Below, in pieces: positions 381-43,897 of a stretch of DNA of 64,000 nucleotides; position 1 is the first letter of the stretch; every line of letters starts with the position of its first letter. Source of the stretch: Macrostomum lignano (Eukaryota). The notes below the pieces were generated by a model. That model had not been told where the DNA came from, did no database searches, and saw only the letters and a list, made by a program, of their open reading frames with translations. The stretch covers positions 247,910 through 311,909 of the forward strand of contig NIVC01001334.1 in assembly GCA_002269645.1 (NCBI GenBank), written 5' to 3'. The position numbers and the translations under genes are program-made.

Positions 381-2041
381 TCGCTTGATTACCACGGTTT
401 CATTACATGATTCACCCTATCGGATGCCGACTTTCCTACCTGTGCTGAAGGCGTTGTTAATGTAGTCGGATTTATCGCTGTGATTAGCCAAAATCAGTTT
501 ATTGATGAATATTCCTCCTGTCTGTATGTTTAGTCTGATGGTTACTTAATGCATTGTTTTTTATTCATAAGTGGCTCTGCTGCATGTCCCAGTACATTTG
601 ATGCAGTAACGCTTTGGTGAGACTAATAAATGTAATATTTTTGCCATTCATAAATATTATTGAACTATTCACTTATTGCTAAACTAAAACATATTGATGC
701 TAAAGTCTTGGCTTGGTTATTTTTGGCCCATCAATTATGGGATCTTCGAGAGCGGTTGGTGCAGTAGCTGAACAGCACTTAAAATGGATACTTTCAAAAC
801 CAGTCACCAGTCACCAGAATTATTTGTACTCAAAAAAAATCACAAAAATTGTCAGCTTAGGAAACCAGTTTCTCAATATTTGGCTCCAGAAAATTAATAA
901 TGAGTTCATGTATATTATTCACAGAGTCAAAGATAAAGATAGGAGAGCCAATGTTAGACTAAGGATTTTGATTGATAATGAAGAAAACAGCATTTTCAAT
1001 GACATATAATTATGCACAGCATGAAGCAAATTGAATAATGAAAACTTACAACTTAAACAAGAGAAACGAATCTAATGAGCACTATTTAAAGTATTAAAAT
1101 TGTCATTCAATTTAATAAGCAATTATGGCAAAATTATAAGATGACTCATTTTATCCAATAAGATTTAGAAATTTTTATGCTGTTAGACTACACAATCACA
1201 CATAATACTAAAATGCATACTAAGAAACCAGATTATATAGATTAAACAAAAGATTTTTGAGGCACCAGGCACAAACATACTTATTTAACAGCAAAAAAAT
1301 GAAAATTATATTTCATTTATTAAATACCATTTATACTGGTAGACACACTTAAATAAATCAAGGCAGAAAATGAAGAAATGTAAAAATGTACTTAAATTTT
1401 TAGTTTTTTTACAAGCAGATTTTATTGTTAAGAATTACAGTTCTAAAAATTGGCAAAGTTGGAGACAAAATTTAACATAAATTGTATTTAAACAGATAGA
1501 AAATGGTATTAATGTTAATTAATTTAAATTATTCTTTATCTTTTCTTGATGAGAAAACTCTGAAGGCTCCAATTGAGTAGTAGTATCAAAAATTATAATT
1601 AAATAACAAAGATGATGAATTAGATTATTTTTAATGGCTTTAGTGATCTCAAGCTGCCTATCTGGGCAATTAAATTGTAGCCCAGAAATATACATTAATT
1701 AAAAATATAAAAGTCCATTTATACTCACTCGTATATGACTGTATATTTATAGAGCAATGTTATTACAAAACTTAGATACTAGATATGATATATTTCATGC
1801 TTAGCTATTTAATCACAATGTAAAACCAATACTGCAATAGTGTAAAACTGTATATCAGTACTATAAATCAAGTAGGCCTATTAACTGTATAAAATATTAA
1901 AGTATTCTATGATACTTAAAGTTAAAAATCAAGTGTCAATTTTATAGGCCTAATTGAACTAGCTATTGAGACTAAGTTTATTGAGGACTGGATATTGAGT
2001 GAATCAACTTGGACTAACTTAAAGAAAGCTAAAAATAAGGC

Positions 2042-2944
2042 TTATTGGATCCTGCTAGCCATTGCTGCTGCTTCTGGTGCTGGTGCTGCTGGAATAGGCA
2101 GCTTATTGAGTCTGCAATAGGCTTCAATTGTATACTCGATGATCTTCTCAATAAACTCCAACTGACCAGTCTCTTCAAACCGCCTCAGAAACTGTGGATC
2201 AAACTGCAGCAACATTGCTTTGCTGTCTGGCTCCTGGCCTTTGAACTTTTTCTCCAATTCCATGGCTGCCATGTCATACAGGGCCTCCACAATAAAGCGC
2301 CAATACATTGGCTTGTTACCCCAGTGCTCTGGGTGGTGTTCGTTGTGGCAATAGTGATGGTGCAGGCCAGTCTCCCAGGCGTCATCGTCGCACTTGCTCC
2401 CATGGAAGCAGGGATACCATTTCATGGCGTAGGTGACAGTCTCTACAAAGCTGTACTTGCTGTCATCATGCACATCGATCTGCTCCTCAGTGGGATCTTG
2501 CTCTGGGCGGTACTCGGGGAGTAGGCGGCCTTCTTGGTGTAGTCTGGGCTTTACTGCAGAGATGACTAAGTCATTAAAGACTTCGAAGCCCCTTTTAACG
2601 TAGCTTTTGTGCCGATTGACGTACGAATAGTAAGTCTCCACGTTCAGGTTCTTCCAAATCAGCTTTGTAGGCGGACTTTCAGTTAGAAGCGCTGATCGCT
2701 GTTCATCACTTCTCAGCTGCCTTAATTTATTCAGCCGTGCAGTCACATCTTGTTTCAACTTACAAGGCCAGATGAACAACACGATACGCATTATCGTATG
2801 GTAGGGCTTGTGCCTGGACTTAATCTTCAGAATATCCAGTAATTCTACATCTGTCTGGTCAACAGTGGCAATAAACGGCTCCGCCAAGTTCTCGTTTTGT
2901 TTGGAGGAGCCTGCTATAATCAGACCTTCAGTCTGTTTAGACAT
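2042..2944 (-). CDS. Intronless DUF5662-like / HD-superfamily putative metal-dependent phosphohydrolase, ~300 aa
   Basis: Open ORF from ATG 2944 to TAA 2042. Motif series RHKSYV ... HDDSKYS..E ... HHHYCHNEHHPEHW ... M...IVE..YD..A matches my recollection of DUF5662 (HDxSK...HHxxxNxHHxExW...ExxxD). AATAAA on the minus strand (tttatt 1977-1982) lies ~60 nt past the stop. Family call needs HMM confirmation. Confidence 0.75.
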   Translation of the reverse strand: MSKQTEGLIIAGSSKQNENLAEPFIATVDQTDVELLDILKIKSRHKPYHTIMRIVLFIWPCKLKQDVTARLNKLRQLRSDEQRSALLTESPPTKLIWKNLNVETYYSYVNRHKSYVKRGFEVFNDLVISAVKPRLHQEGRLLPEYRPEQDPTEEQIDVHDDSKYSFVETVTYAMKWYPCFHGSKCDDDAWETGLHHHYCHNEHHPEHWGNKPMYWRFIVEALYDMAAMELEKKFKGQEPDSKAMLLQFDPQFLRRFEETGQLEFIEKIIEYTIEAYCRLNKLPIPAAPAPEAAAMASRIQ

Positions 2945-4402: not shown

Positions 4403-5232
4403 AGGGTGATTCTCACACCATAGGGGCGATTCTCACAGATGACATAGGGGCGATTCTCACAAATGGCATAGGGGCGATTCTCACACATGGCATAGGGGCG
4501 ATTCTCACAGATGGCATAGGGGCGATTCTCACACATGGCATAGGGGCGATTCTCACAGATGAAATAGGGGCGATTCTCACACATGGCATAGGGGCGATTC
4601 TCACACATGGCATAGGGGCGATTCTAACACATGGCATAGGGGTGATTCTCACAGATGGCATAGGGGCGATTCTCACAGATGGTATAGGGGCGATTCTCAC
4701 AGATGGCATAGGGGCGATTCTCACACATGGCATAGGGGCGATTCTCACAGATGACATAGGGGCGATTCTCACACATGGCATAGGGGCGATTCTCACAGAT
4801 GGCATAGGGGCGATTCTCACAGATGGCATAGGGGCGATTCTCACACCATAGGGGCGATTCTCACACATGGCATAGGGGCGATTCTCACAGATGGTATAGG
4901 GGCGATTCTCACACCATAGGGGCGATTCTCACACCATAGGGGCGATTCTCACACATGGCATAGGGGCGATTCTAACACATGGCATAGGGGTGATTCTCAC
5001 AGATGGCATAGGGGCGATTCTCACAGATGGTATAGGGGCGATTCTCACAGATGGCATAGGGGCGATTCTCACAGATGGCATAGGGGCGATTCTCACAAAT
5101 GGCATAGGGGCGATTCTCACAGATGGCATAGGGGCGATTCTCACAGATGGCATAGGGGCAATTCTCACAGATGGTATAGGGGCGATTCTCACAGATGGCA
5201 TAGGGGCAATTCTCACAGATGGTATAGGGGCG
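4403..5232. repeat. 24-bp minisatellite (GGCATAGGGGCGATTCTCACAGAT)
   Basis: Direct inspection; explains the 8-aa-period ORFs. Confidence 0.95.
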
Positions 5233-5240
5233 TCTGTGAG

Positions 5241-6007
5241 AATGACCCGAGGGGCAAGGGCGATTCTCAGGAATGACCCGAGGGGCAAGGGCGATTCTCA
5301 GGAATGACCCGAGGGGCAAGGGCGATTCTCAGGAATGACCCGAGGGGCAAGGGCGATTCTCAGGAATGACCCGAGGGGCAAGGGCGATTCTCAGGAATGA
5401 CCCGAGGGGCAAGGGCGATTCTCAGGAATGACCCGAGGGGCAAGGGCGATTCTCAGGAATGACCCGAGGGGCAAGGGCGATTCTCAGGAATGACCCGAGG
5501 GGCAAGGGCGATTCTCAGGAATGACCCGAGGGGCAAGGGCGATTCTCAGGAATGACCCGAGGGGCAAGGGCGATTCTCAGGAATGACCCGAGGGGCAAGG
5601 GCGATTCTCAGGAATGACCCGAGGGGCAAGGGCGATTCTCAGGAATGACCCGAGGGGCAAGGGCGATTCTCAGGAATGACCCGAGGGGCAAGGGCGATTC
5701 TCAGGAATGACCCGAGGGGCAAGGGCGATTCTCAGGAATGACCCGAGGGGCAAGGGCGATTCTCAGGAATGACCCGAGGGGCAAGGGCGATTCTCAGGAA
5801 TGACCCGAGGGGCAAGGGCGATTCTCAGGAATGACCCGAGGGGCAAGGGCGATTCTCAGGAATGACCCGAGGGGCAAGGGCGATTCTCAGGAATGACCGG
5901 AGGGGCAAGGGCGATTCTCAGGAATGACCCGAGGGGCAAGGGCAATTCTCAGGAATGACCCGAGGGGCAAGGGCGATTCTCAGGAATGACCCGAGGGGCA
6001 AGGGCGA
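5241..6007. repeat. 31-bp highly homogeneous minisatellite (AGGAATGACCCGAGGGGCAAGGGCGATTCTC)
   Basis: ~25 near-perfect copies abutting the 24-mer array. Confidence 0.95.
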
Positions 6008-6441: not shown

Positions 6442-6712
6442 GCATGATCTGGGTTCATGACTTGAGATCTAGACTTCATGATCTGGAATCTAGACTTCAT
6501 GATCTGGAATCTAGACTTCATGATCTGGAATCTAGACTTCATGATCTGGAATCTAGACTTCATGATCTGGAATCTAGACTTCATGATCTGGAATCTAGAC
6601 TTCATGATCTGGAATCTAGACTTCATGATCTGGAATCTAGACTTCATGATCTGGAATCTAGACTTCATGATCTGGAATCTAGACTTCATGATCTGGAATC
6701 TAGAGTTCAGGA
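6442..6712. repeat. 21-bp minisatellite (CATGATCTGGAATCTAGACTT)
   Basis: ~12 near-perfect copies. Confidence 0.95.
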
Positions 6713-7660
6713 TCTTGGATTTAGAGTTCAGGATCTGGGATTCAAAGGGTTCAGGATCTGGGACTCAAAGGGTTCAGGATCTGGGACTCAAAGGGTTCAG
6801 GATCTGGGATTCAAAGGGTTCAGGATCTGGGACTCAAAGGGTTCAGGATCTGGAACTCAAAGGGTTCAGGATCTGGGACTCAAAGGGTTCAGGATCTGGG
6901 ACTCAAAGGGTTTAGGATCTGGGACTCAAAGGGTTCAGGATCTGGGACTCAAAGGGTTCAGGATCTGGGACTCAAAGGGTTCAGGATCTGGGACTCAAAG
7001 GGTTCAGGATCTGGGATTCAAAGGGTTCAGGATCTGGGACTCAAAGGGTTCAGGATCTGGGACTCAAAGGGTTCAGGATCTGGAACTCAAAGGGTTCAGG
7101 ATCTGGGACTCAAAGGGTTCAGGATCTGGGACTCAAAGGGTTTGGGATCTGGGACTCAAAGGGTTCAGGATCTGGGACTCAAAGGGTTTAGGATCTGGGA
7201 CTCAAAGGGTTCAGGATCTGGGACTCAAAGGGTTCAGGATCTGGGACTCAAAGGGTTCAGGATCTGGGATTCAAAGGGTTCAGGATCTGGAACTCAAAGG
7301 GTTCAGGATCTGGGACTCAAAGGGTTCAGGATCTGGGACTCAAAGGGTTCAGGATCTGGGATTCAAAGGGTTCAGGATCTGGGACTCAAAGGGTTCAGGA
7401 TCTGGGATTCAAAGGGTTCAGGATCTGGGACTCAAAGGGTTCAGGATCTGGGACTCAAAGGGTTTAGGATCTGGGACTCAAAGGGTTCAGGATCTGGGAC
7501 TCAAAGGGTTCAGGATCTGGGACTCAAAGGGTTCAGGATCTGGGACTCAAAGGGTTCAGGATCTGGGACTCAAAGGGTTCAGGATCTGGGACTCAAAGGG
7601 TTCAGGATCTGGGACTCAAAGGGTTCAGGATCTGGGACTCAAAGGGTTCAGGATCAGGGA
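6713..7660. repeat. 23-bp minisatellite (CAGGATCTGGGACTCAAAGGGTT)
   Basis: ~40 copies; explains the 441-aa repeat ORF. Confidence 0.95.
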
Positions 7661-8344: not shown

Positions 8345-9003
8345 TCCTCAGATTATTGGGAGATTCTTCACCAATGGTATTATCAGGCTATTGGGAGATT
8401 ATTCCTTAGTGGGATTATCTGGCTATTGAGAGATCATTCCCAAATGGGAATATCAGGCTATTGGGAGATTATTCCCTACTGGGATTAGCGGGCTATTGGG
8501 AGATTCTTCCCAAATAGGATTATCTGGCTATTAAGAGAGTCTTCCCCAGTGGGATTATCGCGCTATTGGGAGATTCTTCCCAAATGGGATTATCAGGCTA
8601 TTAAGATTCTTCCCAAATGGGATTATCAGGCTATTAGATTCTTCCCAAATGGGATTATTAGGCTATTGGGAGATTATTCCGAATGGGATTAACAGGTATT
8701 AGGATTCTTCCCAAATGGGATTATCAGGCTATTAGGATTCTTCCCAAATGGGATTACCAGGCTATTGGGAGATTATTCCCAAATGGGACTATCAAGATAT
8801 TGGGGGACTTTTCCCCAGTGGGATTATCAGATTATTAAGATACAAAATCACGGGGAAGAATCTCCCAATAGCCTGATAGTCCAATCAGGGAAGAATCTCC
8901 CAATAGCCTGATAGTCCAATCAGGGAAGAATCTCCCAATAGCCTGATAGTCCAATCAGGGAAGAATCTCCCAATAGCCTGATAATCCAATTAGGGAAGAA
9001 TGG
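8345..9003. repeat. ~35-bp minisatellite with an orientation switch near 8845
   Basis: ATTGGGAGATTCTTCCCAAATGGGATTATCAGGCT units, followed by reverse-complement units GGGAAGAATCTCCCAATAGCCTGATAGTCCAATCA. Confidence 0.85.
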
Positions 9004-9039: not shown

Positions 9040-12000
9040 TCAGCGCAGAGCATTGCTGCTCTCCAGCAGGGTGTCAAACTTGGCCACGATGGCGCTGAAC
9101 GTTGGCCGTTCAACCGGGCTGGCCTTCCAGCACTCCAGCATGACGTAGATGTACACTTGCTGCTCCGGACAGAGGCGGGGCTTCTCCAGCACGCCGCCTT
9201 CCATGACGTACTCGCACACCTCCGGGTTGGTCTTGCCCTGGTACGGAGTGTCGCAGGCGGTGAACACCTCCCACATGAGGATGCCGAACGCCCACACGTC
9301 CGACCTGGCGCTGTACTTGTTGCACTGGAACACCTCGGGGGCCGCCCAGCGCACCGGGAACTTTGAGCCTGCCGATGCGTCATACTCCTGGTCCAGCAGG
9401 AACCGCGCCATGCCGAAGTCGCTCACCTTCACCTGCGAGAGAGACGACCATCTTTCTGATGAATTGATCATTTTACTCATCACCCTCCACCCGAAGTCTC
9501 TACCCTTCTACCGATCAGTCTACCCTCCTACCGGACAGTGCCTTTACCGGATAGTCTCTGCCCCTTTACCAGACCCCGGGCCCCACCCGCAGCTCCCCTC
9601 ACCTCAATGTAGCCGTGCAGATGCAGCACAGACTTGACAAGAATATTCCTAGATGCCAGATCCCTGTGGATGACATTCCTCTCCTCCAGGTACATCATTG
9701 CCACGGCGACTTGATTGCAGACGTCTAGCAGAGCCGCCACCCGATTATTCTTCAAATAGTGAGTCCGCCTCGATCGCAAGAAGTCCTTTAACGATCCATA
9801 GGGCATGAAGTCTGTGATGATCATCACCGGCTTGGACTTGGTGACCACGCCGAACAGCTGCACCAGGTTGGGGTGGTTCAGGTTCCGCATATTCCTGGCC
9901 TCCTCAATGAAATCGTCCTCGGCCATGTTGCCGTCCAGCATCAGCTTCACGGCTACCTGCGTGCCGCGCAGCTGGCCCCGACGGACTTCGCCGAATTGGC
10001 CGCGGCCGACTGGCTCCGGGTCCAGGCGCAGCTCGGCCGGGTCCACCTCCAGCTCGTCAAAGCCGAGGCCGGCCGGGGCTGGCGCCTCCTGGCCGAGGCT
10101 GGGCGGCGATCGAAGTCGGACAACCAGGCCTGGAGTGTCCGGAATTCGAGTTGCGGACGTAGGGGACGAATGTGAGACATGCGATTACTGTGTGAATGCG
10201 ATTACTGTGTGAATGCGATTACTGTGTGAATGTGATTACTGAGTGAATGTGATTACTATGTGAATGCGATTACTGTGTGAATGCGATTACTGTGTGAATG
10301 TGATTACTGTGTGAATGTGATTACTGAGTGAATGTGATTACTATGTGAATGCGATTACTGTGTGAATGCGATTACTGTGTGAATGTGATTACTATGTGAA
10401 TGCGATTACTGTGTGAATGCGATTACTGTGTGAATGTGATTACTGTGTGAATGTGATTACTGAGTGAATGTGATTACTATGTGAATGCGATTACTGTGTG
10501 AATGCGATTACTGTGTGAATGTGATTACTGTGTGAATGTGATTACTGTGTGAATGCGATTACTGTGTGAATGTGATTACTGTGTGAATGCGATTACTGTG
10601 TGGATGCGATTACTGTGTGAATGTGATTACTGTGTGAATGCGATTACTGTGTAAATGTAATTACTGTGAATGCGATTACTGTGTGAATGCGAAAATGTCA
10701 TTGCTGTGTGAATGGGATTACTGTGTGAATGCGATTACTGTGTGGATGTGATTACTGTTACTGTGAAATTATTAAATGTATATTGTGTCAATACCACCTT
10801 ACTGTTTGAATTCTGGATTACTACGGGAGTTTGCAATTAGGAGTACTGTGTGACTGCGTGATTACTGTGTCTATGTGACAGCAAATGGAGCTCAGTACTC
10901 CTATATATGAACTTATGATTCACGCACCTCCAGAGTTGTGCTTGTGATAGTAAATAAGCTCAGGAATGGACGGAAATGCGTGCTTCTCAGACAGATAGAA
11001 CTGGTTGTCCTCCGTCAGGTTGATGTGATAGTGGTGCACTCGCCACTCGCTTCGGCTGAAAACCAAATTTAGAAGACAAAATTCTCCGGTTACCTACTAT
11101 GAGTAGTTGAAGCATTAAACACGGATAGCATGTAACTCACTTGTTCACATCCTTAGCCATAACAGACAGGGTGTAGGCGTCCTTTTTTGAGACCGAGTCC
11201 CGGACCAGGAAGCAGCCCTCCTTCCTGCCGGCATCCAGCAGCATGTGCTCAGCCCGCTGGCGACTGATCTTGCGGTAATACCAACTGCGATTTGGGTGAA
11301 GCAGGCGGGGCAATAAGGTCAACTTTTGGGCTGGTGCAGCACAAGATGGATGATGATCATCTAGTGCGGCTATCCTATCCATCTCAGTCACTATCTACCT
11401 TAAATCTACTTCTGAGTCTCTACCTACCTTATCTACTTTTCAGTCTCTACCTACCTTATCTACTTCTCAGTCTCTACCTACCTTATCTACTTTTCAGTCT
11501 CTACCTACCTTATCTACTTCTCAGTCTCTAACCTATATTCTTAATCACTATTTACCTTTTCTACCTCTCTAAGTCTCTACCTGCCTTATCTATCTGAGTC
11601 ACTATGTATCTTATCTACTTCTCAGTCACTATCTACATTTCTACTTTTAAGTCTCTACCTACATTATCTACTTCTCAGTCTCTACCTACCTTATCTACTT
11701 CTCAGTCACTATTTACCCTTTTCTACGTCTTTGTCAATATCTACCTTATCTACTTCTCAGTTAGTAGCCACCTAATCTACTTCTCAGTCAGTATCTACCT
11801 TATCTACATCTCAGGCGCTATGTACTATACCTGTTTCTCAGTCTCTAATCTACCTTACCTACTACTGCCACGATCTCTATACATGTAAATGATAGCATAA
11901 ATCAAAGCAACCAGACAGCGCTCACTCGAAAGTTTCCAAACTATCTGGCTTGCGAATGTAGTTAGTCGGTATGTAGCCGTATTCGCTGCAATTGTATAAA

Positions 12001-15000
12001 ATTAATAATGCCAACACACTTCATTCATAGTAAAAATAAAACAAATTGTAAACTAGATTTGAAATACGAAATACAATAACCAGACTCACCCGGCAGAGTC
12101 GCGCACGTACCACCACTTTGAATTGGTGCCGTCCACTACTATGTAGCGATTGCCCTGAAGTGCAGCATGGCGTGAGTGAAAGTGCTTTAATAGGCTATGC
12201 ACGTTTTGTAGAGAGATATGATCCCGAATCCCGACTAGACTGAAGGGACTGACCCCGAATTCCGACTATACTGAAAGGATTGATCCCGAATCCCGACTAG
12301 ACTGAAGGACTGATCCCGAATCCCGACTAGACTGAAAGGACTGACCCCGAATCCCGACTAGACTGAAGGACTGATCCCGGATTCTAGGAGGAGGACCCGT
12401 ACGCAAACCCTTCGATTAAAATATCCCAATGCCGCACCTTCTCCAGTTTGAGTTGGTTCTCCCGCATGGGCCGGAAATTGTGGATAGCAACCACCACGTT
12501 GCCACCGACTGGGGGAGCTGCCGCTGTCACACCGGCGGCGTCGCCAAAAACGGCGCCAGAAGCTTCAGTTGAAGCGGCAACTGCTTCAGCTTGCTGCTGC
12601 TGCTGCTGCTGCGGCTGCTGCAGGTTAGACAGAGACCGGCTGTGCGGCGCCAGCGGCTGCCGTCCGGAGCCGTTCTCTTCCAGGGCGCCGGTCGCCGCGG
12701 CGCCATCCGTTGGCATTGCCGGCTGGCAGCCCTGGGCGCGCTTGTCCCCGGCGGCGCAACAGGCGAATCGGCCGGCGCGCCACACGCTCGGGTGATAGGT
12801 TGGCGCGAATCTGGCGCCGCGCGCCACCGCGTGCTGCCTGATGGCCGACAGCCAGGAGTCTCGCTCTGATTGGCTGGGCGCCGTGGCGTACATCGTGTAG
12901 AAAGTGTTGTGCACGTCCTCCACGTAGACAATCTGCAAGCTGCAGGAGTCGCCGGACTGCGGCATCTCCAACTGCTGCTGGCAGTCTAACGCGCCTCGCT
13001 GCACAGTCTCTACGGCCTTCATCAGGGCCAGGAATATGCGGCCTTTCATCTTGTGGCGCGGATTCTAAATTATGAAAATGAATTGTGTCGCTATTACTAA
13101 GAATGGGAATGAATTGTGTCGCTATTTCTAAGAATGGGAATGAATTGTGGCGCTATTTAGAATAGGAATGAATTGTGGCGCTGTTAGGCTTGGGCGGAGC
13201 TTCGCACTGTTTATTATTTGATTGCTTATTCCACTGGTGCTTGTACTTTTGTTCAGTTTGAGTGTACGCGTCAAATTATTATTGTCATCGTGCTCTGATG
13301 TGCAGTGTGGTGAGTTTTAGTCCTGGGTTGGGGGGTTGTCGCAGGCTCGTGCTTTATCGTTGATAATAAATATTTTCGCACTGAGCATTGGCTCAGAGCT
13401 ATCGTTTTCTCGTCTCATAGCAATTGCTCGCCTTGGCTTGTCATTTCCAACATTTTGGCGTCGCAAGCAGGATTGCATGCATGTCTATCAAGCTACGAGA
13501 CCCACTGCCACTGGAAAGCATTGAAGAGCTGCGGGTGAAACGAAAAATTTATATGGGTTTTCCCATATTATCGTTTCCTTCTGCCAACAGTTCAGGAAGA
13601 CAACGAACAATGGACCTCGATGGTAACTTTCTCTTTGTGATCTCTAGAGTCACATTCACAAACTTCAGGCGAGGATCTTTCCTCTTCAATCAGCATATTT
13701 TATAAGCTAGCACACTGTACGCGAGCAACGAGGAATAGGAGCAGTAGGGAGAGAGAGTGGGATTTCGATGCCCAATAGGCATTGTCGGTCAGAGGTTGTG
13801 CATGCATCACGCGAGGGTCGCATGGCTGGGCTTCTTGCTCGCCGATCATCAGGACTATTTTTAGGCATGCAGATCTTGTGCATCTGGGGAGTTGCTGCCA
13901 AGGCTGGATGCTTGTTCACGCATCACGCGCGTGTCGGCTGATTTCTCCCATCCTCTTGCTAACGGCGCCTTCGTTTCACTTCACGGGCATGGGTCGAAGT
14001 CTTCGATGCTCAGGCGAGGTCAAAAGGAGTGCAGGACACCGACGGCAACCTGGCACTGACAGACGCTTTTCTGGGCTGTCTGGGCGTGGCTCAGCTAATC
14101 AAAGTGAAGCAGCTGGTGGCACCGAGCCAGCTTTCTAAGATGAAGTGGGCCGACATCAAAGCGTGCCTGATTCGATTTCTGGAACCCAAGAAAAGGCTGC
14201 TGATTTCGGAGCGGGTGGCCTTCATGTCCATGCGCCAGGGCGAGGGTGAGAGCATCACCGGCTTCGCTGCCCGTCTTCGAGAACAGGCAGTGGTGTGCGA
14301 GTTCGAGAAGCTGAAGGACGAGGATGTAAACCCAGCAGAGCAGCTGATCAAAATGCGACTGATTGCTGGCCTCAGAAATCAAGACATCAGAAGCAAAGTG
14401 CTCGAACGTGAGGTTTCTTCGGAGCTTTCGGTGGACCAGATTTCAGACTATGTGCAGCAGCTACAGATGGTGAGCACCTTCTTGACTGGACCGCTGACTG
14501 TGTTAGGCCAGGCTCAAGTTGGTTCAGCGGTGCACCAGACGGCGCCTAGCCATGATGCGCCATGCCAGGACCTTGAAGACGCGGCCGGTGTCAATACGTG
14601 GAGAAGTCGAGAACCGAATGTGAGTGGAAGCCAGATGTGCCAGCGCTGCGGCCAGAAGTCTCATCGCAAGTCAACTGACTGCTGGGCGCTGAAAGCCACC
14701 TGTCGTCAGTGCGGAAAACTCGGACACTTTGCCCGAGTCTGCAGGAGCGCCAAAACTCACTTCGCCGCAGAAAAAGCAATGTCTGCAGATTCTACCAGTT
14801 ATGAGCCCGTCTTCTACTGCGGTGAGGGCACCCCGGCTGCTTTCTGCATGGTCAAGATCAACGGCAAGCAGGTGAAGATGGAGAAGGATAGCGGTGCGGC
14901 GTGCTCACTGATATCAAGAAAGATCTGGGAGGATCTTGGCAGACCGCCACTGAAATCGGCGAAGTCCCGGATGCTGACCTACGACGGTCATGTGATGAAG

Positions 15001-18000
15001 CAGCTCGGCATCCTGGAGTGCCTGGTGGAGACTGACGGCACGGACGGTCGCTTCATTGCCGCTGAGTTGCCTGTCATCGACTGCCAGCAAAAGTTTGGAC
15101 TGCTAGGCCGGGATTTGCTCAACTCGCTGCCAGCTCACCATTCTGATGAGGCCAAGGCACCCAGCAGCAACAGATATGAGAGCTTACTGGGTATTAAGGG
15201 AGCAGTCGGAGAGATTCGGTTGAAGACAGGAGCCGGGCCGATCTTCCAGCCAGCCAGAGAGCTGCCATTGGCGCTGCGTCCGTTAGTAAAAAAGGAGCTG
15301 GACTTGATGGAGAAGGCGGGAATAGTCGAGAGGGTGACATCGTCGGAGTGGGGCAGCCCGATTGTGGTGACGGTGAAGTCGGACAAGGCGTCAGTGAGGA
15401 TTTGCGGAGATTACACAGCAGTCAATCAGTGGGTGCAGGATCAGACATACCTGACTCCATCAATAGAGACAGCGTTTTCCAAGATGGCCAACAAGAAGCT
15501 GTTCTGCCGTCTTGACCTTTCTGATGCCTATTATCAAATACCGCTGGAGAATGAGTCTAAAGACATCACCACCATCAACACTCCATTTGGCTGTTATCGC
15601 TTCAATAGGCTGCCGTACGGCATCAAGGTCTCTCCGTCTGTGTTCCAGCGGGAGATGGAGAAGCTGTTAAGCGAACATCCAGGTGTCATTGTGTATCAGG
15701 ATGACGTCCTCATGGGCGCGGTGACGAAGACAGAGTTGGTGAACATTCGCACAGGAATACTCGACAAGTTGAGAGCGCAAATGTTAAAGTCAATGAAGCA
15801 AAGTGCATCATGGAAGCACCCAGTTTGAAGTTCCTTGCCCACATAATAGATGAGGAAGGGATCAAGCCAGATCCTGGCATGGTTCAACGGATTCAAGACG
15901 TGGAACCTCCAAAGAACAAGAAGGACCTCGAGCGGTTTCTGGGACTGGCCCAGTTCTACGGTCGGTTGGTCCCCAATTTTGCTGAGAAGTGCCGGCCTTT
16001 GCAGGAACTTCGCCAGGCGGACCGGGTGTTCGAGTGGAGTTCTGTGGCTGAAGCTGCGTTTGCCTGTGTGAAGCAGAGCCTGAGTTCGAATCCGTGCGTG
16101 AAACCATTTGATGTCAGCTCTCCTGTCTGTCTACGCGTGGATGCTAGTGAGCAGTCATTGGTTACTGTTCTGGTGCAGTCAGGTCATCCGGTTATGTACC
16201 TGTCACGTGCTCTGACGAAGTCTGAAGCAAATTACTCGAACATTGAGAGAGAGGCCCTTGCAATTGTTTGGGCAGTGAAGAGAGCTCGCAAGATGCTGCT
16301 AGGCAAGAGGCTTACTCTCCAGACCGACCATGAGCCGCTAAAGTATATTTTCAATCCGAGCAAAAACCTTCCCAAAACGGTGTCAGAAAGACTAATGCGC
16401 TGGGCTTTGAGACTGTCGGCTTTCGATTACGTGGTCGAGTACGTGCCTGGGAGGTTGATGACGGATGCTGATGCTTTGTCACGTTTGAGCTTTTCCGAGC
16501 AAGATGCACAGAATGATTTAATTCACCAGCTGGAGTCTGAGGTCGTCACTGAAGGGGCTCTGGTGACCTTGCAAGAGCTACGTGAAGGAACTCGGAGGTG
16601 TTCGTTGTTGACACGGCTCCGGCAGAGAATCAGAACCGGCAGGTGGGGCCAGGTGTCGCAGGTGGAGAGACCGTACAAGGCGTGTCGTGAGGCTCTGTCA
16701 GTCGAAAATGGCCTGGTGATCCATGGAACCAGAATTGTGCCGCCACCCATTCTCCGCAGGCGCATCCTGGAGGCGGCCCATGACGAAGTACACCCGAGTG
16801 CTGACAACACCAAGGCGCACATCTCCAAGGAATTCTGGTGGCCTGGCCTGGATCGCGAGGTGCGGAATTTTGTGGAGCGCTGTCCGCAGTGCTCAGAAAC
16901 TCGACCGGTGCTTCAGCGGAAAATCGACATCTGGCCAGCCGAGAGTGAGCCATGGGTGCGAGTTCACATGGACCACTGTGAGATCTCTGGTGCAGGGCTG
17001 CTCCTGCTGTTGTCCGACTCCTATTCAGGGTGGCCTGAGGCGATTCAGGTGCCTGATTGATCTGCAGAAAGTGTTCTGCGTGTTCTAAGAGCGGTTTTTG
17101 CGAGAAATGGAGTGCCTCAGACGCTGGTGTCGGACAATGCGCCGGAGTTCAAGTCGGAGAAGGTCTCGCAGTGGCTGCGCAGCATTGGTTGTCGTGAACT
17201 GCACACCCCGCCGTATCATCCCGCCTCGAATGGTCAAGCTGAGAGACTGGTGCGAATCATTAAGGATGGTCTCAGAGCGTGGACTAAGGTGGTGCCGTTC
17301 GACCACTTTCTGCAAAAGCTGTTGCTGACGATAAGGACCAGCCGGCCAAGCGGCAATCGCGCAGCCTCTCCAGACATCCTCATGTGGGGCCGTCGGCTTC
17401 GACACCCGCTGACAATGACGGAGCAAGCTGGCGATCCAATCTGGCTGAGGATGCGACCTGGAACTCCTCCGGTGCCAGCCAAGTTCGTGGTGCAGCATGG
17501 CCTGAACACGGCGCTCGTCACTCCGGCCGATCAGCCTGGCGGTGGCTTGCGGCTGGCGCACTCAAATCAGTGGACCGGCCGGCCAGACTCTCCTAAGCGG
17601 CTTGAGACACCTGAACCCGATGGTGCGCTGACTGACCCAGTGGTGGCCATGGAAGACGACCCGCGGCTCGACCTGGAGCGCCAGGAGCCTGGAAACATTT
17701 GCCACCGGGAGCCGTACGAGTTTCGCCCTCGGCAGCCTGTTTGCTACAAGGACTGATGAGTGATATTGACTGTGGGGATTTCATGTGACTGTCTTTGACT
17801 TTTGTTTGCTTTTTGTGGGGAGCAGTGTTAGGCTTGGGCGGAGCTTCGCACTGTTTATTATTTGATTGCTTATTCCACTGGTGCTTGTACTTTTGTTCAG
17901 TTTGAGTGTACGCGTCAAATTATTATTGTCATCGTGCTCTGATGTGCAGTGTGGTGAGTTTTAGTCCTGGGTTGGGGGGTTGTCGCAGGCTCGTGCTTTA

Positions 18001-38330: not shown

Positions 38331-38379
38331 AACAGAGATTGCCCCCGTGACCCGACCCCCTCCCCCCACGCCCAGCAGC

Positions 38380-40620
38380 ATGCACTCGAGCTTCCCTCAC
38401 TGGCTCAACAAGTCGACTGGCAACGGGTCAGCAACCGAGGCCGCGTTGCTGCGCCTTCGCTACTCCGCGCCCGAGGCCGCTGTGATCGGCCTCAGCGTCC
38501 TGGTCATCTGGGTGCTGGTGGTGCTCGGCAACCTGCTGGTCATTGTTGCCATCGCCCGCGACCGAAAGGTGGCCACGCTGCAGAACTGGTTCCTGGCCTC
38601 CTTGGCCTTCGCCGACCTGCTGCTGGGCCTGCTGGTGATGCCGTTTTCCCTCACCAACCAGCTGCTTGGCGCCTGGGTGTTCGGCGCCAAGTGGTGCGAG
38701 CTCTGGCTGGCTATCGACGTTCTGATGTGCACCGCCAGCATCATGAACCTGTGCCTCATCAGCCTGGACCGCTACTGGAGCATGTCCCGGGCCCTGGTCT
38801 ATCATAGGCAGCGGACCCGGTCCCGGGCGGCTCTCATGATTGCCGTGGTGTGGTTTCTGTCAGCCGGGGTCTGCCTGCCGCCTCTGCTCGGCTGGCGGAA
38901 GCCGCAGGTCAGCGAAGTGCGCTGCGAACTCACCGACGAGATTGGCTACGTTGTCTACTCCAGCATGGGCAGCTTCTACATCCCCATGCTCATCATGGTG
39001 GTGGTGTACGCGAAGATCTTCCAGAGAGCTCGGCAGCGGGTGCGGCGTCGGCAGCTGATTCACTCGGTGAACATGGCGGCGCTGAGGAATTCCGCGGATC
39101 AGCTACGGGTGAGTTGAGTCTGGCCTCTGAATCGTCTAAAAATCTAACATGTGGTGCCACAATTGCCTCAATCATTAACAAATGTGTATTTAGTGGCTAT
39201 CGAACCATTGACATTGGGTTCGTTGGTGGGTGATGCCTCATGAACATTGGGTTAGTGGTGGGTGATGCCTCATGAACATTGGGTTGGTTGGTGGGTGATG
39301 ACTCATGAACATTGGGTTGGTTGGTGGGTGATGTCTCATGAACATTGGGTTGGTTGGGATGACTCATGAAAATTGGGTTGGTTGGTGGGAGATGACTCAT
39401 GAACTTTGGGTTGGTGGGTGGGTGATGCCTCATGAACATTGGGTTGGTTGTTGGTGATGTCTCATGAACATTCGAGTGGTTTGTGGGTGATGACTCATGA
39501 ACATTGGCTTGGTTGGTGGGTGATGTCTTATGAACATTGGGTTGGTTCGTGGGTGATGACTCATGAACATTGGGTTGGTTGGTGGGTGATGACTCATGAA
39601 CATTGGGTTGGTTGGTGGGTGATGTCTTATGAACATTCGAGTAGTTTGTGGGTGATGACTCATGAACATTGGGTTGGTTGGTGGGTGATGTCTTATGAAC
39701 ATTGGGTTGGTGGGTGGGTGATGACTCATGAACATTGGGTTGGTTGGTGGGTGATGTCTTATGAACATTGGGTTGGTGGGTGGGTGATGACTCATGAACA
39801 TTGGGTTGGTTGGTGGGTGATGCCTCATGAACATTGGGTTGGTTGGTGGGTGATGTCTTATGAACATTGGGTTGGTGGGTGGGTGATGACTCATGAACAT
39901 TGGGTTGGTTGGTGGGTGATGCCTCATGAACATTGGGTTGGTTGGTGGGTGATGTCTTATGAACATTCGAGTGGTTTGTGGGTGATGTCTCATGAACATT
40001 GGGTTGGTTCGTGGGTGATGACTCATGAACTTTGGGTTTGTTGATGGCTTATAGTTCAGAGTATTTAATTACGAGCGGTCCGGTCTCAAATCTACACCTT
40101 GCTCAACACAAAACCAACTGCCCATCAGACCCGAACATCGTCCAAACCGTCTTCAAGCAAGTCGGTATCGCCCGGAGACACGGATCGAGCAGATGAAAAA
40201 TCGGACTGCGCGGTCACCGAGCGACGAAATCAATCCGAGGAGGAGGAGGAGGACGCCGATGAGGGCATCGTCCCGGTCGACTCTGAGGCGGACGGCGGCG
40301 GTGGCGGCGGCAACAGCACAGTGGTCGAGCCGCTGACTGAGCTCAGCGAGGCTCTGCAGCGGAAGAGGCGACTAGCGAAGGCCAAGGAGCGCCGGGCAAC
40401 CCTCGTCCTCGGCCTCATCATGGGCGCCTTCGTGCTCTGCTGGTTTCCCTTCTTCACCACCTACCTGCTGCACATCCTCTGCCGCTGCGTGTCTCACCTT
40501 GTCTTCGACTTTTTCTTCTGGCTTGGCTACTGCAACAGCGCCATCAACCCGGTGATTTACACCGTGTTCAATAAGGACTTTAGGCAGGCGTTCAGACGAA
40601 TTCTCACCTGCAGAGCCTGA
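38380..40620 (+). CDS. ADRA2: Alpha-2-adrenergic-like biogenic amine GPCR, 2 exons, ~406 aa
   Basis: Exons 38380-39108 and 40129-40620 (phase 0). GN in TM1, LAFAD in TM2, TM3 Asp (AIDVLMCTASI), DRY, TM5 SSMGSF, KERRATLVL..CWFPFF, FFWLGYCNSAINPVIY, DFRQAFRRIL..C. Confidence 0.9.
39200..40040. repeat. 33-bp minisatellite in the GPCR intron (CATGAACATTGGGTTGGTTGGTGGGTGATGACT)
   Basis: ~25 copies; explains the 11-aa-period ORFs. Confidence 0.95.
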
Positions 40621-41947: not shown

Positions 41948-43897
41948 ATGAACGGGGCTCGGGCAGACGGCAGGCTGTCTTATGACCAGCTGCTAATCAA
42001 TGCCACAGTAGGTTTCGTTGCCGCTCTAGCCGTATCCGTTTTGGCTTTGTTCTCCGTCGACTGGAACTGCGGTCTGTGCTTCGCAGGGCTTGGTAAGTTC
42101 CACAGCTGCAGCATGCATGGCGTTTCATAACCCTCGATGCTCTCTTGATCCCTTGGTGCTGGCGCCCAACAATGACGTTCCTTACATGTACAATGGCACC
42201 CCGAAGAAGCACCCTACTATTGCGCCTTAAAATTGATGCTCCCCCGAGATGGCGCCTCTGGCACTGGTGCCTCAAAGTCGACGTTCTTCGACTTGAAATC
42301 AAATTTAGAAATCAAGCCCGTTGGTCAATCGATTCGCGTGATTCACGTTTCTTTTCTGTGTTAATTTTAAAGATTTTACACCTGATTGCTCTTCCAGTCT
42401 TGGCATCGGTTCTGCTAGCCGCCGGCGCCGCTGCCTGCCAGTACATTCGACGCAAGGAGCCGTCCGATTCGCTCAGCTGGCGCGGCTTCATCACCAGCGT
42501 GCTGCTGAGGCTTTTCGTCGAAACGATCGCCCGCTACTCGCTGAGCGCCAACCGCAAAGCGTACAAGTCGTGCAGTTCGATCCGAGCGGCGCAGGAGAAA
42601 ACGCTGATGCGAATTGTGCGCCAGAGCCGGGACACGCTGTTCGGCCGCGATCACCGATTCGCTGAGATTCACAGCATCGAGGACTATCGAGCCCTCGTGC
42701 CCGTGAGAGACTACGCCCAGCTCGATAAGTACAACCAATTGGCCTACAGAGGTGAACCCGATGTTTTCTTCAAGGGACGCGCCGATTACCTGGCCAAGAC
42801 AAGCGGAACCACGGGAAAGAACAAGACTTTTCCCATGGCAAAACGGTACCGGATGCAGCAGATATGGGGCTTCTTCGCCAATATGTCCTGCAGCGAGGTC
42901 TTTCTTGCCAAAGTCGGCCGGCGAGAAACAATGGCTCCTCAGCTGTACCTGGCAGTGCTGTCAGGCGACAGGCAAAATGAATTCGGAATTGACATTGGCC
43001 CGCTTTCAAAGTACTTCTTTTCTAACGGTGAGACAAAAATTTCAGCTTGTGCACAGTTCTTAGCAATAATTGAAGCACCGAATGCAGTAGTTCGATGCTG
43101 GTAACGTTTTGGTTCAGAGGCCCAGGTAACATTATTTTCAAACTGTTTCGTCATGTTTAGCATCACAAAAATTCACTTCAGGAGAAATCTACGCCACACC
43201 GGATGAGGTTTTCACAAGAATTCACGACTCGGATGCGTGCTTCTATCTGCACGCGGTGTTCGCCCTGTCCTTGGAGCGGATTGGATCCGCTTTAGCATTC
43301 TTCCCGACAAACCTGATCTCTTTCATGCGCTGCCTGAACTCCAACTGGGACTCGGTGCTGTCTGACATTGAGAACGGCAAGCTTCTCTGGAGAAAACGAC
43401 AGAGAAGAGTCTCCAGGCGGGTGCAATGCTCAGCATTGGGCAACTCGGGTGCACCATGGTCGACTTCACGGCAACCGACTGCTTTCTGTACGAGCCGCTT
43501 GTTAACACGTCGCGCGGGAGCAAGTACTATGTGCTCTTTGTAGAGCTGGACGGAGATAAATGTTTGAACGATGAGGAAAAGCTGCTGGTACGTTAGGTCA
43601 GATAGTTTGTACCAAGATGAGTTCTAAAAATTAAATCGCTATTATACCCATAGTGCACAACTTATGAAATTTTAGTTTGATAAGTCGCTGATGGACAGCT
43701 GCGAAAACTACAAACTGTTTCGAACCGAAGGGCACATCGATTCGATGCATGTCGTACAAGTTGGTCGCGGTGCATTCGCAGACCTCAGACGCACTATGAT
43801 GGAGCTAAATAAGGACATCAGTGAGACTCAGTTCAAGATGCCGAGGGTTTTGAAGACGGGCGAGCATGTGAAGTGCCTGCTGAAGCATCGTCTGTAA
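41948..43897 (+). pseudogene. GHDC: GH3/GHDC-like paralog A with a large frameshifting internal deletion
   Basis: Exons 41948-42092, 42398-43028, ~43181-43588 and 43676-43897. KTSGTTGKNK and QFKMPR are present. At ~43385, IENGKL is fused out of frame to LEKTTEKSLQ, so ~184 codons present in paralog B are missing. Confidence 0.8.

What the first reader, a model, noticed from the sequence alone, without database searches (positions are those of the whole stretch)
2042..2944. Intronless phage/prokaryote-type DUF5662-like HD enzyme in an animal genome
Seen: a 300-codon ORF without introns, in a window where every other host gene is spliced, set in very AT-rich DNA, with a eukaryotic polyA signal after the stop and a complete HDxSK / HHH..N.HHPEHW / E..D His-Asp metal-binding array. 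Knowledge: this motif layout is typical of DUF5662/HD-superfamily proteins, which I associate mainly with phages, bacteria and giant viruses. Inference: a horizontally acquired and domesticated nucleotide phosphohydrolase with an extra ~100-aa N-terminal module, possibly acting in nucleotide sanitation or antiviral/antibacterial defence.
Basis: partly seen in the sequence, partly recalled or inferred. Interest (0 to 1): 0.75.

Follow-up and report, generated by a model that had tools for sequence, protein, structure and literature searches.

The report
Flatworm gene of bacterial-viral DUF5662 family
A real, intron-free gene of the flatworm Macrostomum lignano encodes a protein of an uncharacterised family (DUF5662) otherwise seen mainly in phage-like and microbial metagenome DNA; scallops and a crayfish carry relatives, and it did not match known HD enzymes or any solved structure in the tests run here.

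Summary
Window 2042-2944 (minus strand) is an intact 300-codon ORF with AT-rich flanks and an AATAAA 59 nt after the stop. It scores 64.7 bits against Pfam DUF5662 (cut-off 27) and keeps all 11 family-invariant residues.

The window is the end of a 312-kb Macrostomum lignano contig. Two further copies sit between the same two animal genes, so this is not contamination.

- **HD enzyme:** not shown. Pfam scans, a profile search of PDB sequences, an hhalign test and Foldseek with two confident models (pLDDT 85 and 95) found no HD protein and no significant match to any solved structure.
- **Phage or prokaryote type:** imprecise. The protein belongs to a long-form subfamily that separates from the ~180-aa forms found on viral (IMG/VR) and metagenome contigs (98% bootstrap). 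The subfamily also includes scallop and crayfish genes, marine environmental contigs and at least one contig that looks like a large eukaryotic DNA virus. The "extra" N-terminal module appears common to this subfamily (weak sequence support).
- **Horizontal origin:** plausible, but the donor is unknown.
- **Domestication:** unproven. dN/dS among the three copies is about 1.

The function is an inferred metal-dependent hydrolase and is untested.

The parts
2042..2944 (-). Complete intronless CDS (300 aa plus TAA) of the Macrostomum lignano DUF5662 gene, in the same gene cluster as Mlig027342.g2 and .g3.
   Evidence: ORF listing and translation. The exact protein is encoded on NIVC01001334.1. 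Pfam DUF5662 scores 64.7 bits.
2639..2944 (-). N-terminal extension, residues 1-102. Residues 1-28 are predicted disordered. Residues 32-99 are helical and contain W59, which is invariant in the long-form alignment.
   Evidence: AF2 model. Alignment with scallop modules and environmental long forms. An HMM built from this region alone gives weak, colinear hits in crayfish, scallop and environmental long forms, E 0.004-0.1.
2222..2638 (-). DUF5662 core as matched by Pfam (residues 103-241).
   Evidence: A model of residues 95-285 alone has pLDDT 94.7 and pTM 0.90.
2609..2611 (-). Codon of H112, the first invariant histidine.
   Evidence: Invariant in 122 aligned family members.
2456..2470 (-). 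HDDSK motif. H159, D160, S162 and K163 are invariant.
   Evidence: Sequence read directly. Invariant columns.
2321..2362 (-). HHHYCHNEHHPEHW motif. H197, H204 and P205 are invariant. H196, N201, E202, H203, E206 and W208 are at least 90% conserved.
2273..2287 (-). E220-A-L-Y-D224. E220 and D224 are invariant acidic residues.
2059..2061 (-). One-base insertion (a G) relative to the two paralogous copies. It shifts the frame of the last 7 codons and gives an earlier stop, so this copy is 300 aa against 304 and 306 aa.
   Evidence: Three-way DNA alignment of the 3' ends. Protein alignment.
1977..1982 (-). AATAAA polyadenylation signal 59 nt downstream of the stop, conserved in all three copies.
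9040..13049 (-). Upstream host neighbour: exon fragments of a Tec/BTK-type tyrosine kinase gene. The kinase domain ORF is 9528-10046 and the BTK-motif ORF is 12384-13049. The neighbour on the other side, a Rab5-bind/FYVE gene, lies just beyond window position 1.
   Evidence: Pfam scan of window ORFs. The same gene order is seen in L007 and L008 and in L006.

Best explanation
The ORF is a genuine nuclear gene of Macrostomum lignano. It encodes a long-form member of the uncharacterised DUF5662 family.

Shown:
- It lies about 250 kb inside a 312-kb animal contig.
- It has two further copies in the same gene order (Tec/BTK kinase, then DUF5662, then a convergent Rab5-bind/FYVE gene), as expected from the recent whole-genome duplication of this species.
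- It keeps every family-invariant residue: H112, H159-D160-x-S162-K163, H197, H204-P205, M213, E220, D224.
- It folds in silico into a confident all-helical domain.

Inferred:
- The His/Asp/Glu array binds one or two metal ions, and the protein is a metal-dependent hydrolase, most likely a phosphoesterase acting on a nucleotide-derived substrate. This reading rests on the ligand order H..HD..H..H..D. It also rests on fusions of DUF5662 to DHH/DHHA1 phosphoesterase and to P-loop kinase/NTPase domains in other organisms.
- The gene entered the flatworm lineage horizontally, before the genome duplication. The source carried the long form, with an N-terminal helical extension of roughly 80-100 aa. 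That source may have been a large DNA virus of aquatic eukaryotes rather than a phage or bacterium.

Whether the gene is still under selection in the flatworm is open.
For: Identity and integration:
- Pfam hit.
- The exact protein is on NIVC01001334.1.
- Paralogues PAA66005.1 and PAA87112.1 have the same neighbours.
- The three loci are colinear at 93-97% identity over more than 13 kb.
- The recent whole-genome duplication is documented (PMC5704211, PMC10733133).

Expression (indirect): the GenBank annotation was built only from RNA-seq-derived transcripts (PMC5730564).

Catalytic array: 11 columns are invariant across 122 sequences.

Structure: pLDDT 85.2 for the full-length model and 94.7 for the core.

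Nucleotide-related associations:
- DUF5662 fused to DHH and DHHA1 (P0135) and to P-loop kinase-like domains (P0182).
- Phage neighbours include an SNF2 helicase, a DNA methylase, a NadR-like protein and PnuC.
- A dUTPase lies next to the gene in L142.

Distribution:
- 2,579 representative clusters match. Most of the 150 best listed are about 170-230 aa.
- Core-only matches were found in 50 IMG/VR viral loci and 80 metagenome loci.
- The only named animal hits are M. lignano, pectinid scallops and the crayfish Cherax quadricarinatus.

Phylogeny: the M. lignano clade has 93% bootstrap support. All long forms separate from the short forms at 98%.

Virus-like carriers of long forms: L142 and L143.
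Against: - No biochemical data exist for any DUF5662 protein, and no paper mentions the family.
- The HD fold was not recovered, so the enzyme class is inferred from residues alone.
- dN/dS among the three copies is about 0.8-1.2, based on few substitutions (4-9 synonymous, 15-26 non-synonymous). This is compatible with relaxed or absent constraint.
- The window copy has a frameshift in its terminal tail.
- The donor is not identified. The origins of the closest relatives (P0002, P0003, P0010, P0011, P0126) are unknown, and all sit on contigs of about 1 kb.
- Presence in three protostome phyla also allows ancient vertical descent with many losses.
- The trees are neighbour-joining trees on 160 columns, not maximum likelihood.
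Confidence: 0.6

Rival explanations
1. Ancient animal gene. A long-form DUF5662 gene was already present in an early protostome or spiralian ancestor. It was inherited vertically and lost in most lineages, surviving in Macrostomum, pectinid scallops and crayfish.
For: Long-form genes occur in three protostome phyla on chromosome-scale or large contigs. They share the N-terminal extension and C-terminal helices. All long forms separate from the short forms at 98% bootstrap.
Against: - Only three named animal lineages carry it among about 5.8 billion database proteins. No other flatworm, mollusc class or arthropod is named.
- The flatworm clade does not group specifically with the scallop and crayfish clade. 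Each clade is interleaved with environmental sequences or sequences from virus-like contigs.
- The CDS is intronless in both M. lignano and Argopecten.
Confidence: 0.2
2. Decaying relic. The gene was acquired horizontally but has no function in the flatworm. The three copies drift neutrally and are intact only because the duplication is recent.
For: Pairwise dN/dS is 0.78, 0.78 and 1.18. The CDS differs by about 2-4% between copies, against 5.5-7% in alignments that span the gene and its flanks. There is a terminal 1-nt frameshift in the window copy. GC3 is 0.565, below the neighbouring kinase (0.76) and GPCR (0.86).
Against: - All three 900-nt ORFs are open and all 11 invariant residues are intact.
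- The protein is 41-47% identical to the other members of its clade, with complete motif conservation. This implies long-term constraint in the lineage.
- Transcript-derived gene models exist.
- The AATAAA and the 3' UTR are conserved.
- The substitution counts are too small to exclude moderate purifying selection.
Confidence: 0.15
3. Contaminant or assembly chimera. A bacterial or phage fragment was joined to flatworm DNA.
For: The family is mostly microbial or viral. The ORF is intronless and its composition differs from its flanks.
Against: Three independent contigs (312, 180 and 176 kb) carry the gene between the same two multi-exon animal genes. They are colinear over more than 13 kb, including satellites and UTRs. 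No microbial gene lies nearby. A eukaryotic polyA signal is present.
Confidence: 0.02

Closest known systems
Pfam PF18907 (DUF5662), short-form proteins of about 150-200 aa on viral (IMG/VR) and metagenome contigs
   Same: The window protein scores above the Pfam gathering score. It has the same 11 invariant residues (H, HDxSK, H, HP, M, E, D) and the same helical core.
   Different: The flatworm protein is 300 aa. It has a helical N-terminal extension and extra C-terminal helices. It is only 23-30% identical to the short forms and separates from them at 98% bootstrap. It is also encoded in an animal nucleus with a polyA signal.
Scallop and crayfish long-form DUF5662 proteins: Mizuhopecten yessoensis LOC110453791, Ylistrum balloti LOC132549525, an Argopecten irradians 224-aa protein, and Cherax quadricarinatus LOC128703814
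   Same: They are animal nuclear genes and use the same long-form unit of about 220-250 aa. The alignment runs from the N-terminal W59 region to the C-terminal F..FL.RF helix. The Argopecten CDS is also intronless.
   Different: They are 24-29% identical to the flatworm protein and fall in a different clade. The Mizuhopecten (LOC110453791), Ylistrum and crayfish proteins carry two modules in tandem. They lack the insert at residues 137-150 that is seen in the flatworm protein.
HD-domain metal-dependent phosphohydrolases, for example YfbR-type 5'-nucleotidases and the dinuclear HD enzymes PhnZ, MIOX and HD-GYP (named from general knowledge)
   Same: The candidate ligands follow the same order, H ... 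HD ... H ... H ... D, on an all-helical scaffold. The HDxSK motif resembles the classical HDxGK.
   Different: - No HD-clan Pfam hit in any of 122 members.
- No HD chain in a profile search of PDB sequences, even at E up to 10.
- No HD structure, or any significant structure, from Foldseek with two confident models. The best results were E 0.78 and 2.4, with TM at most 0.27.
- hhalign against a phage HD-domain profile gave a probability of 0.14%.

Membership tests
Pfam DUF5662 (PF18907) | Score above the curated gathering threshold of the family HMM | tested here: met
   64.7 bits against a cut-off of 27, E = 9.7e-18, residues 103-241 matching profile positions 3-127 of 156.
Pfam DUF5662 (PF18907) | Family-invariant residues (H, HDxSK, H, HP, M, E, D) | tested here: met
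   H112, H159, D160, S162, K163, H197, H204, P205, M213, E220 and D224 are invariant in 122 aligned members, including the window protein.
Pfam DUF5662 (PF18907) | Typical architecture: a single domain of about 150-200 aa | tested here: not met
   Of 130 DUF5662 ORFs in viral and metagenome loci, 97 are 150-199 aa. The window protein is 300 aa with an N-terminal extension, which makes it a long-form variant.
HD-domain superfamily | Conserved H...HD...D (or H-HD-H-H-D) metal-ligand motif in that order | tested here: met
   H112, H159-D160, H197, H204 and D224 are invariant. This is a resemblance in residue order only.
HD-domain superfamily | Detectable profile similarity to HD-clan families or to HD proteins of known structure | tested here: not met
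   - hmmscan of 122 members at E up to 1 found only DUF5662 and noise.
- The family profile against PDB sequences at E up to 10 found no HD protein.
- hhalign against an HD profile from phage CCA-adding enzymes gave a probability of 0.14%. That profile has only 3 sequences, so this is a weak test.
HD-domain superfamily | HD fold, meaning structural similarity to solved HD domains | tested here: not met
HD-domain superfamily | Metal-dependent phosphohydrolase activity | not testable with these tools
   Needs purified protein.
Horizontally transferred gene in an animal | Physically linked to bona fide host genes, so not a contaminant | tested here: met
   Three syntenic loci lie between the Tec/BTK kinase and Rab5-bind/FYVE genes on contigs of 176-312 kb.
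Horizontally transferred gene in an animal | Patchy distribution: absent from close relatives of the host | tested here: inconclusive
   No other named flatworm appears among the hits. However, the word-indexed searches are insensitive, the exhaustive search carries no names, and some unnamed relatives on 1-kb contigs (P0002, P0126) could be other flatworms.
Horizontally transferred gene in an animal | Nested phylogenetically inside a donor clade (phage or bacteria) | tested here: not met
   The flatworm clade lies outside the sampled short forms, with a 98% bootstrap split. Its nearest relatives are of unknown origin. The donor is not identified.
Domesticated (functional) foreign gene | Purifying selection and expression in the host | tested here: inconclusive
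   dN/dS is 0.78-1.18 among the copies, on few substitutions. The ORFs and motifs are intact. Expression is supported only by transcript-derived gene models.

The most novel reading that the evidence does not exclude
DUF5662 may be a metal enzyme with a fold not yet represented among solved structures. Its long form may circulate in large DNA viruses of aquatic invertebrates, and may have been captured independently by a flatworm, scallops and a crayfish. In those hosts it could act on a nucleotide-derived signal or metabolite in virus-host conflict.
Probability: 0.12. Interest if true: 0.75.

Novelty: new variant of a known kind. Interest (0 to 1): 0.45.

Why it matters
If the horizontal origin is confirmed, this adds a clean, well-anchored case of foreign gene capture in a genetically tractable flatworm, where RNAi and transgenesis are available. 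It would also link scattered DUF5662 genes of scallops and crayfish to a common long-form lineage that may be carried by viruses.

Independently of origin, DUF5662 is a large family of at least 2,579 clusters at 50% identity. It has a strictly conserved His/Asp array, a very confident predicted structure and no detectable relative among solved structures. That makes it a good target for structure and function work. The practical value today is modest, because no activity or phenotype is known.

Tried and rejected
- NCBIfam, PHROGs and a PDB sequence search with the single protein gave nothing.
- tblastn of the flatworm protein against 50,697 GenBank phage records found no match. A short-form query found only two uncultured phages. 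The "phage" label therefore rests on IMG/VR viral contigs.
- The GTDB genome scan was limited by its search patterns and gave only two loci in one Bacteroidales MAG. This says nothing reliable about the bacterial distribution.
- The JGI metagenome scan returned only core-only relatives and no long form.
- The top three BFVD fold matches (D2E886, A0A1C3NFU6, A0A650EAW1; probability 1.00, E 0.005-0.03) could not be named.
- Literature searches for DUF5662 and for Mlig027342 found nothing.
- Recurrent neighbours in phage loci mostly reflect related phage genomes and gave no clear functional module.
- I considered and rejected contamination and assembly chimera (see rivals).
- I rejected filing the protein under HD enzymes because the profile and fold tests failed.
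- I rejected reading the "Kangiellaceae MAG" hit (P0010) as evidence for a bacterial donor. Its 1,160-nt contig carries (TA)n and (GA)n microsatellites and non-coding flanks, so it looks like mis-binned eukaryotic DNA.

Full report
**Observation**

Window 2042-2944 holds, on the minus strand, an uninterrupted ORF of 300 codons. The ATG is at 2944 and the TAA at 2044-2042.

- HDDSK, residues 159-163
- HHHYCHNEHHPEHW, residues 195-208
- E220-x3-D224

An AATAAA lies 59 nt after the stop, at 1982..1977 on the minus strand. The 1 kb of DNA 3' of the gene is 25% GC, the 1 kb on the 5' side is 41% GC, and the CDS is 47.7% GC.

Pfam gives a single clear hit to DUF5662 (PF18907): E = 9.7e-18, 64.7 bits against a cut-off of 27, over residues 103-241. 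NCBIfam, PHROGs and the PDB sequence search give nothing.

**Where it is**

The exact protein is encoded on Macrostomum lignano contig NIVC01001334.1 (311,909 bp). The window is the last 64 kb of that contig, so the gene sits about 250 kb inside it.

Two further copies exist on contigs of 180 and 176 kb:
- PAA66005.1 (Mlig027342g2), 304 aa
- PAA87112.1 (g3), 306 aa

In all three loci the gene lies between a multi-exon Tec/BTK-type tyrosine kinase gene and a convergent Rab5-bind/FYVE gene. The loci are colinear at 93-97% nucleotide identity over more than 13 kb, including satellites and UTRs.

This matches the documented recent whole-genome duplication and the assembly redundancy of this species (PMC5704211, PMC10733133, PMC5730564). 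Contamination or a chimeric join is therefore excluded, and the gene predates the duplication.

The GenBank annotation of this assembly was built only from RNA-seq-derived transcripts. The existence of the gene models is therefore indirect evidence of transcription. M. lignano genes average 4.9 introns, so an intronless CDS is unusual for this species.

**Relatives**

An exhaustive profile search found 2,579 representative clusters at E up to 1e-3. Only six reach E up to 1e-30, and most of the 150 best listed are about 170-230 aa.

Core-only matches at 27-41% identity occur in 50 IMG/VR viral contigs of up to 232 kb and in 80 metagenome contigs. The DUF5662 ORFs there are mostly 150-200 aa. 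Cultured or deposited phages barely carry the family.

The flatworm protein's close relatives (37-50% identity, full length) are a handful of unnamed sequences on contigs of about 1 kb. Their sources are:
- a Logan run
- an ENA metagenome assembly (ERZ17091519) and a marine metagenome of project PRJEB4352
- a "Kangiellaceae MAG"

Those contigs have non-coding flanks, and one has (TA)n and (GA)n microsatellites. They look eukaryotic rather than bacterial, which is an inference.

The next-best named hits are animal proteins:
- pectinid scallops: Mizuhopecten yessoensis, Ylistrum balloti and Argopecten irradians
- the crayfish Cherax quadricarinatus

In the Mizuhopecten (LOC110453791), Ylistrum and crayfish proteins the module is duplicated in tandem. 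All sit on large or chromosome-scale contigs.

The scallop modules align with the flatworm protein from the N-terminal extension (invariant W59) through the C-terminal F..FL.RF helix. An HMM built from the flatworm clade's N-terminal extension alone gives weak but colinear hits in crayfish, scallop and environmental long forms. The "extra N-terminal module" is therefore a likely subfamily feature, though the sequence signal is weak.

In bootstrapped neighbour-joining trees (81 taxa, 160 columns, 100 replicates):

| Grouping | Bootstrap support |
|---|---|
| Flatworm clade | 93% |
| All long forms against 40 sampled short forms | 98% |
| Scallops, crayfish and environmental relatives | 71% |

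Two members on the long-form side of this split sit in densely coding contigs without phage hallmarks. In L142 the gene is next to a 454-aa dUTPase-containing ORF and a eukaryote-type Ser/Thr kinase. L143 is 89% coding and consists of ORFans. I read these as large DNA viruses of eukaryotes, which is an inference.

**What the protein is**

Eleven residues are invariant across 122 members: H112, H159, D160, S162, K163, H197, H204, P205, M213, E220 and D224. AlphaFold2 gives an all-helical model.

| Model | pLDDT | pTM |
|---|---|---|
| Full length (residues 1-28 disordered) | 85.2 | 0.81 |
| Core, residues 95-285 | 94.7 | 0.90 |

The order of candidate ligands, H..HD..H..H..D, and the HDxSK motif recall HD-domain phosphohydrolases. 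Every test of that relationship failed:
- No HD-clan hit in Pfam scans of all 122 members.
- No HD chain in a profile search of PDB sequences at E up to 10.
- hhalign probability of 0.14% against an HD profile taken from phage CCA-adding enzymes. This is a shallow profile and a weak test.
- No significant Foldseek match to any of 350,542 PDB chains with either model. The best E values were 0.78 and 2.4, and TM was at most 0.27.

Three unnamed viral proteins in BFVD match at probability 1.00 (E 0.005-0.03).

I therefore file the protein under DUF5662 and not under HD. I treat "metal-dependent hydrolase" as an inference from the residue array. That inference is weakly backed by three associations:
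- fusions of DUF5662 with DHH/DHHA1 and P-loop kinase-like domains
- neighbours involved in nucleotide or DNA metabolism
- the dUTPase next to the gene in L142

**Selection**

Pairwise dN/dS among the three copies is 0.78, 0.78 and 1.18. These values rest on 4-9 synonymous and 15-26 non-synonymous differences. That is compatible with relaxed constraint after the duplication.

The window copy also has a 1-nt insertion near position 2060. It shifts the frame of the last seven codons of the tail and brings the stop forward.

Several observations argue against decay. All three ORFs and all invariant residues are intact. The 3' UTR and polyA signal are conserved. The clade as a whole keeps 37-50% identity with complete motif conservation.

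**Verdict**

- The gene is a bona fide, integrated, intronless DUF5662 gene with a very patchy distribution in animals, so horizontal acquisition is the most economical reading. I put this at about 0.6.
- It is not demonstrably an HD enzyme.
- It does not nest among the short forms sampled from viral and metagenome contigs.
- Its N-terminal module appears to be a feature of the long-form subfamily, not of the flatworm alone.
- Relatives exist in scallops, a crayfish and apparently in large eukaryotic viruses.
- Domestication and any role in defence remain untested.

I found no published description of the family.

Noticed in passing
L142 1-11359 (JGI 3300035416, contig Ga0377075_01, 79.5 kb; only this 11-kb piece was fetched): A 289-aa DUF5662 protein (P0292) lies next to a 454-aa ORF with a dUTPase domain, a eukaryote-type Ser/Thr protein kinase and several ORFans. 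There are no phage hallmark genes. It looks like a large DNA virus of a eukaryote and is a possible vector type for the animal genes.
   Followed up: partly
L143 1-6056 (Logan SRR22034055, 7.5-kb contig): P0300 is the nearest relative of the scallop proteins in the NJ tree. It sits in an 89%-coding contig of four ORFan genes with no Pfam or PHROGs hits, which is virus-like, and it shares no similarity with L142.
   Followed up: partly
L003 1-1160 (GCA_036350755.1, 'Kangiellaceae bacterium' MAG): This 1,160-nt contig is binned as bacterial. It carries (TA)n and (GA)n microsatellites, and the DUF5662 ORF really starts at nt 255, upstream of the called gene. It is probably mis-binned eukaryotic DNA, so the record's bacterial source label is doubtful.
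   Followed up: partly
window 2059-2061 (minus strand): The window copy has a 1-nt insertion relative to both paralogues. It shifts the frame of the last 7 codons and brings the stop forward (300 aa against 304 and 306 aa).
   Followed up: yes
window 4419-5232, 5240-6007, 6454-7660, 8354-9000: Four large satellite arrays with periods of 24, 31, 21/23 and 35 nt fill most of the 6 kb between the DUF5662 gene and the kinase gene. They are conserved in position in the paralogous loci.
   Followed up: partly
window 14029-17060 (+): Two adjoining long ORFs encode a Ty3/gypsy-type retrotransposon pol, with aspartyl protease, RT, RNase H and the integrase zinc-binding domain.
   Followed up: no
window 42145-43104 (+) and 52478-53299 (-): Two ORF fragments match the GH3 family (N-terminal and central domains). 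They suggest two GH3-domain genes in opposite orientation. A rhodopsin-type GPCR ORF lies at 38347-39117 (+).
   Followed up: no
L014, L017, L018, L019, L041 and L039, L095, L097, L099 (IMG/VR and metagenome phage loci): In several related phage contigs the short-form DUF5662 gene lies within 3 kb of NadR-like and PnuC (NMN transporter) genes. In others it lies near a CCA-adding enzyme with a classical HD domain (HDxGK).
   Followed up: partly
model m6b48d3358fad (window 2090-2662, minus strand): The core DUF5662 model has pLDDT 94.7, yet no PDB chain matches it with TM above 0.27. The family may represent a fold with no solved representative.
   Followed up: partly
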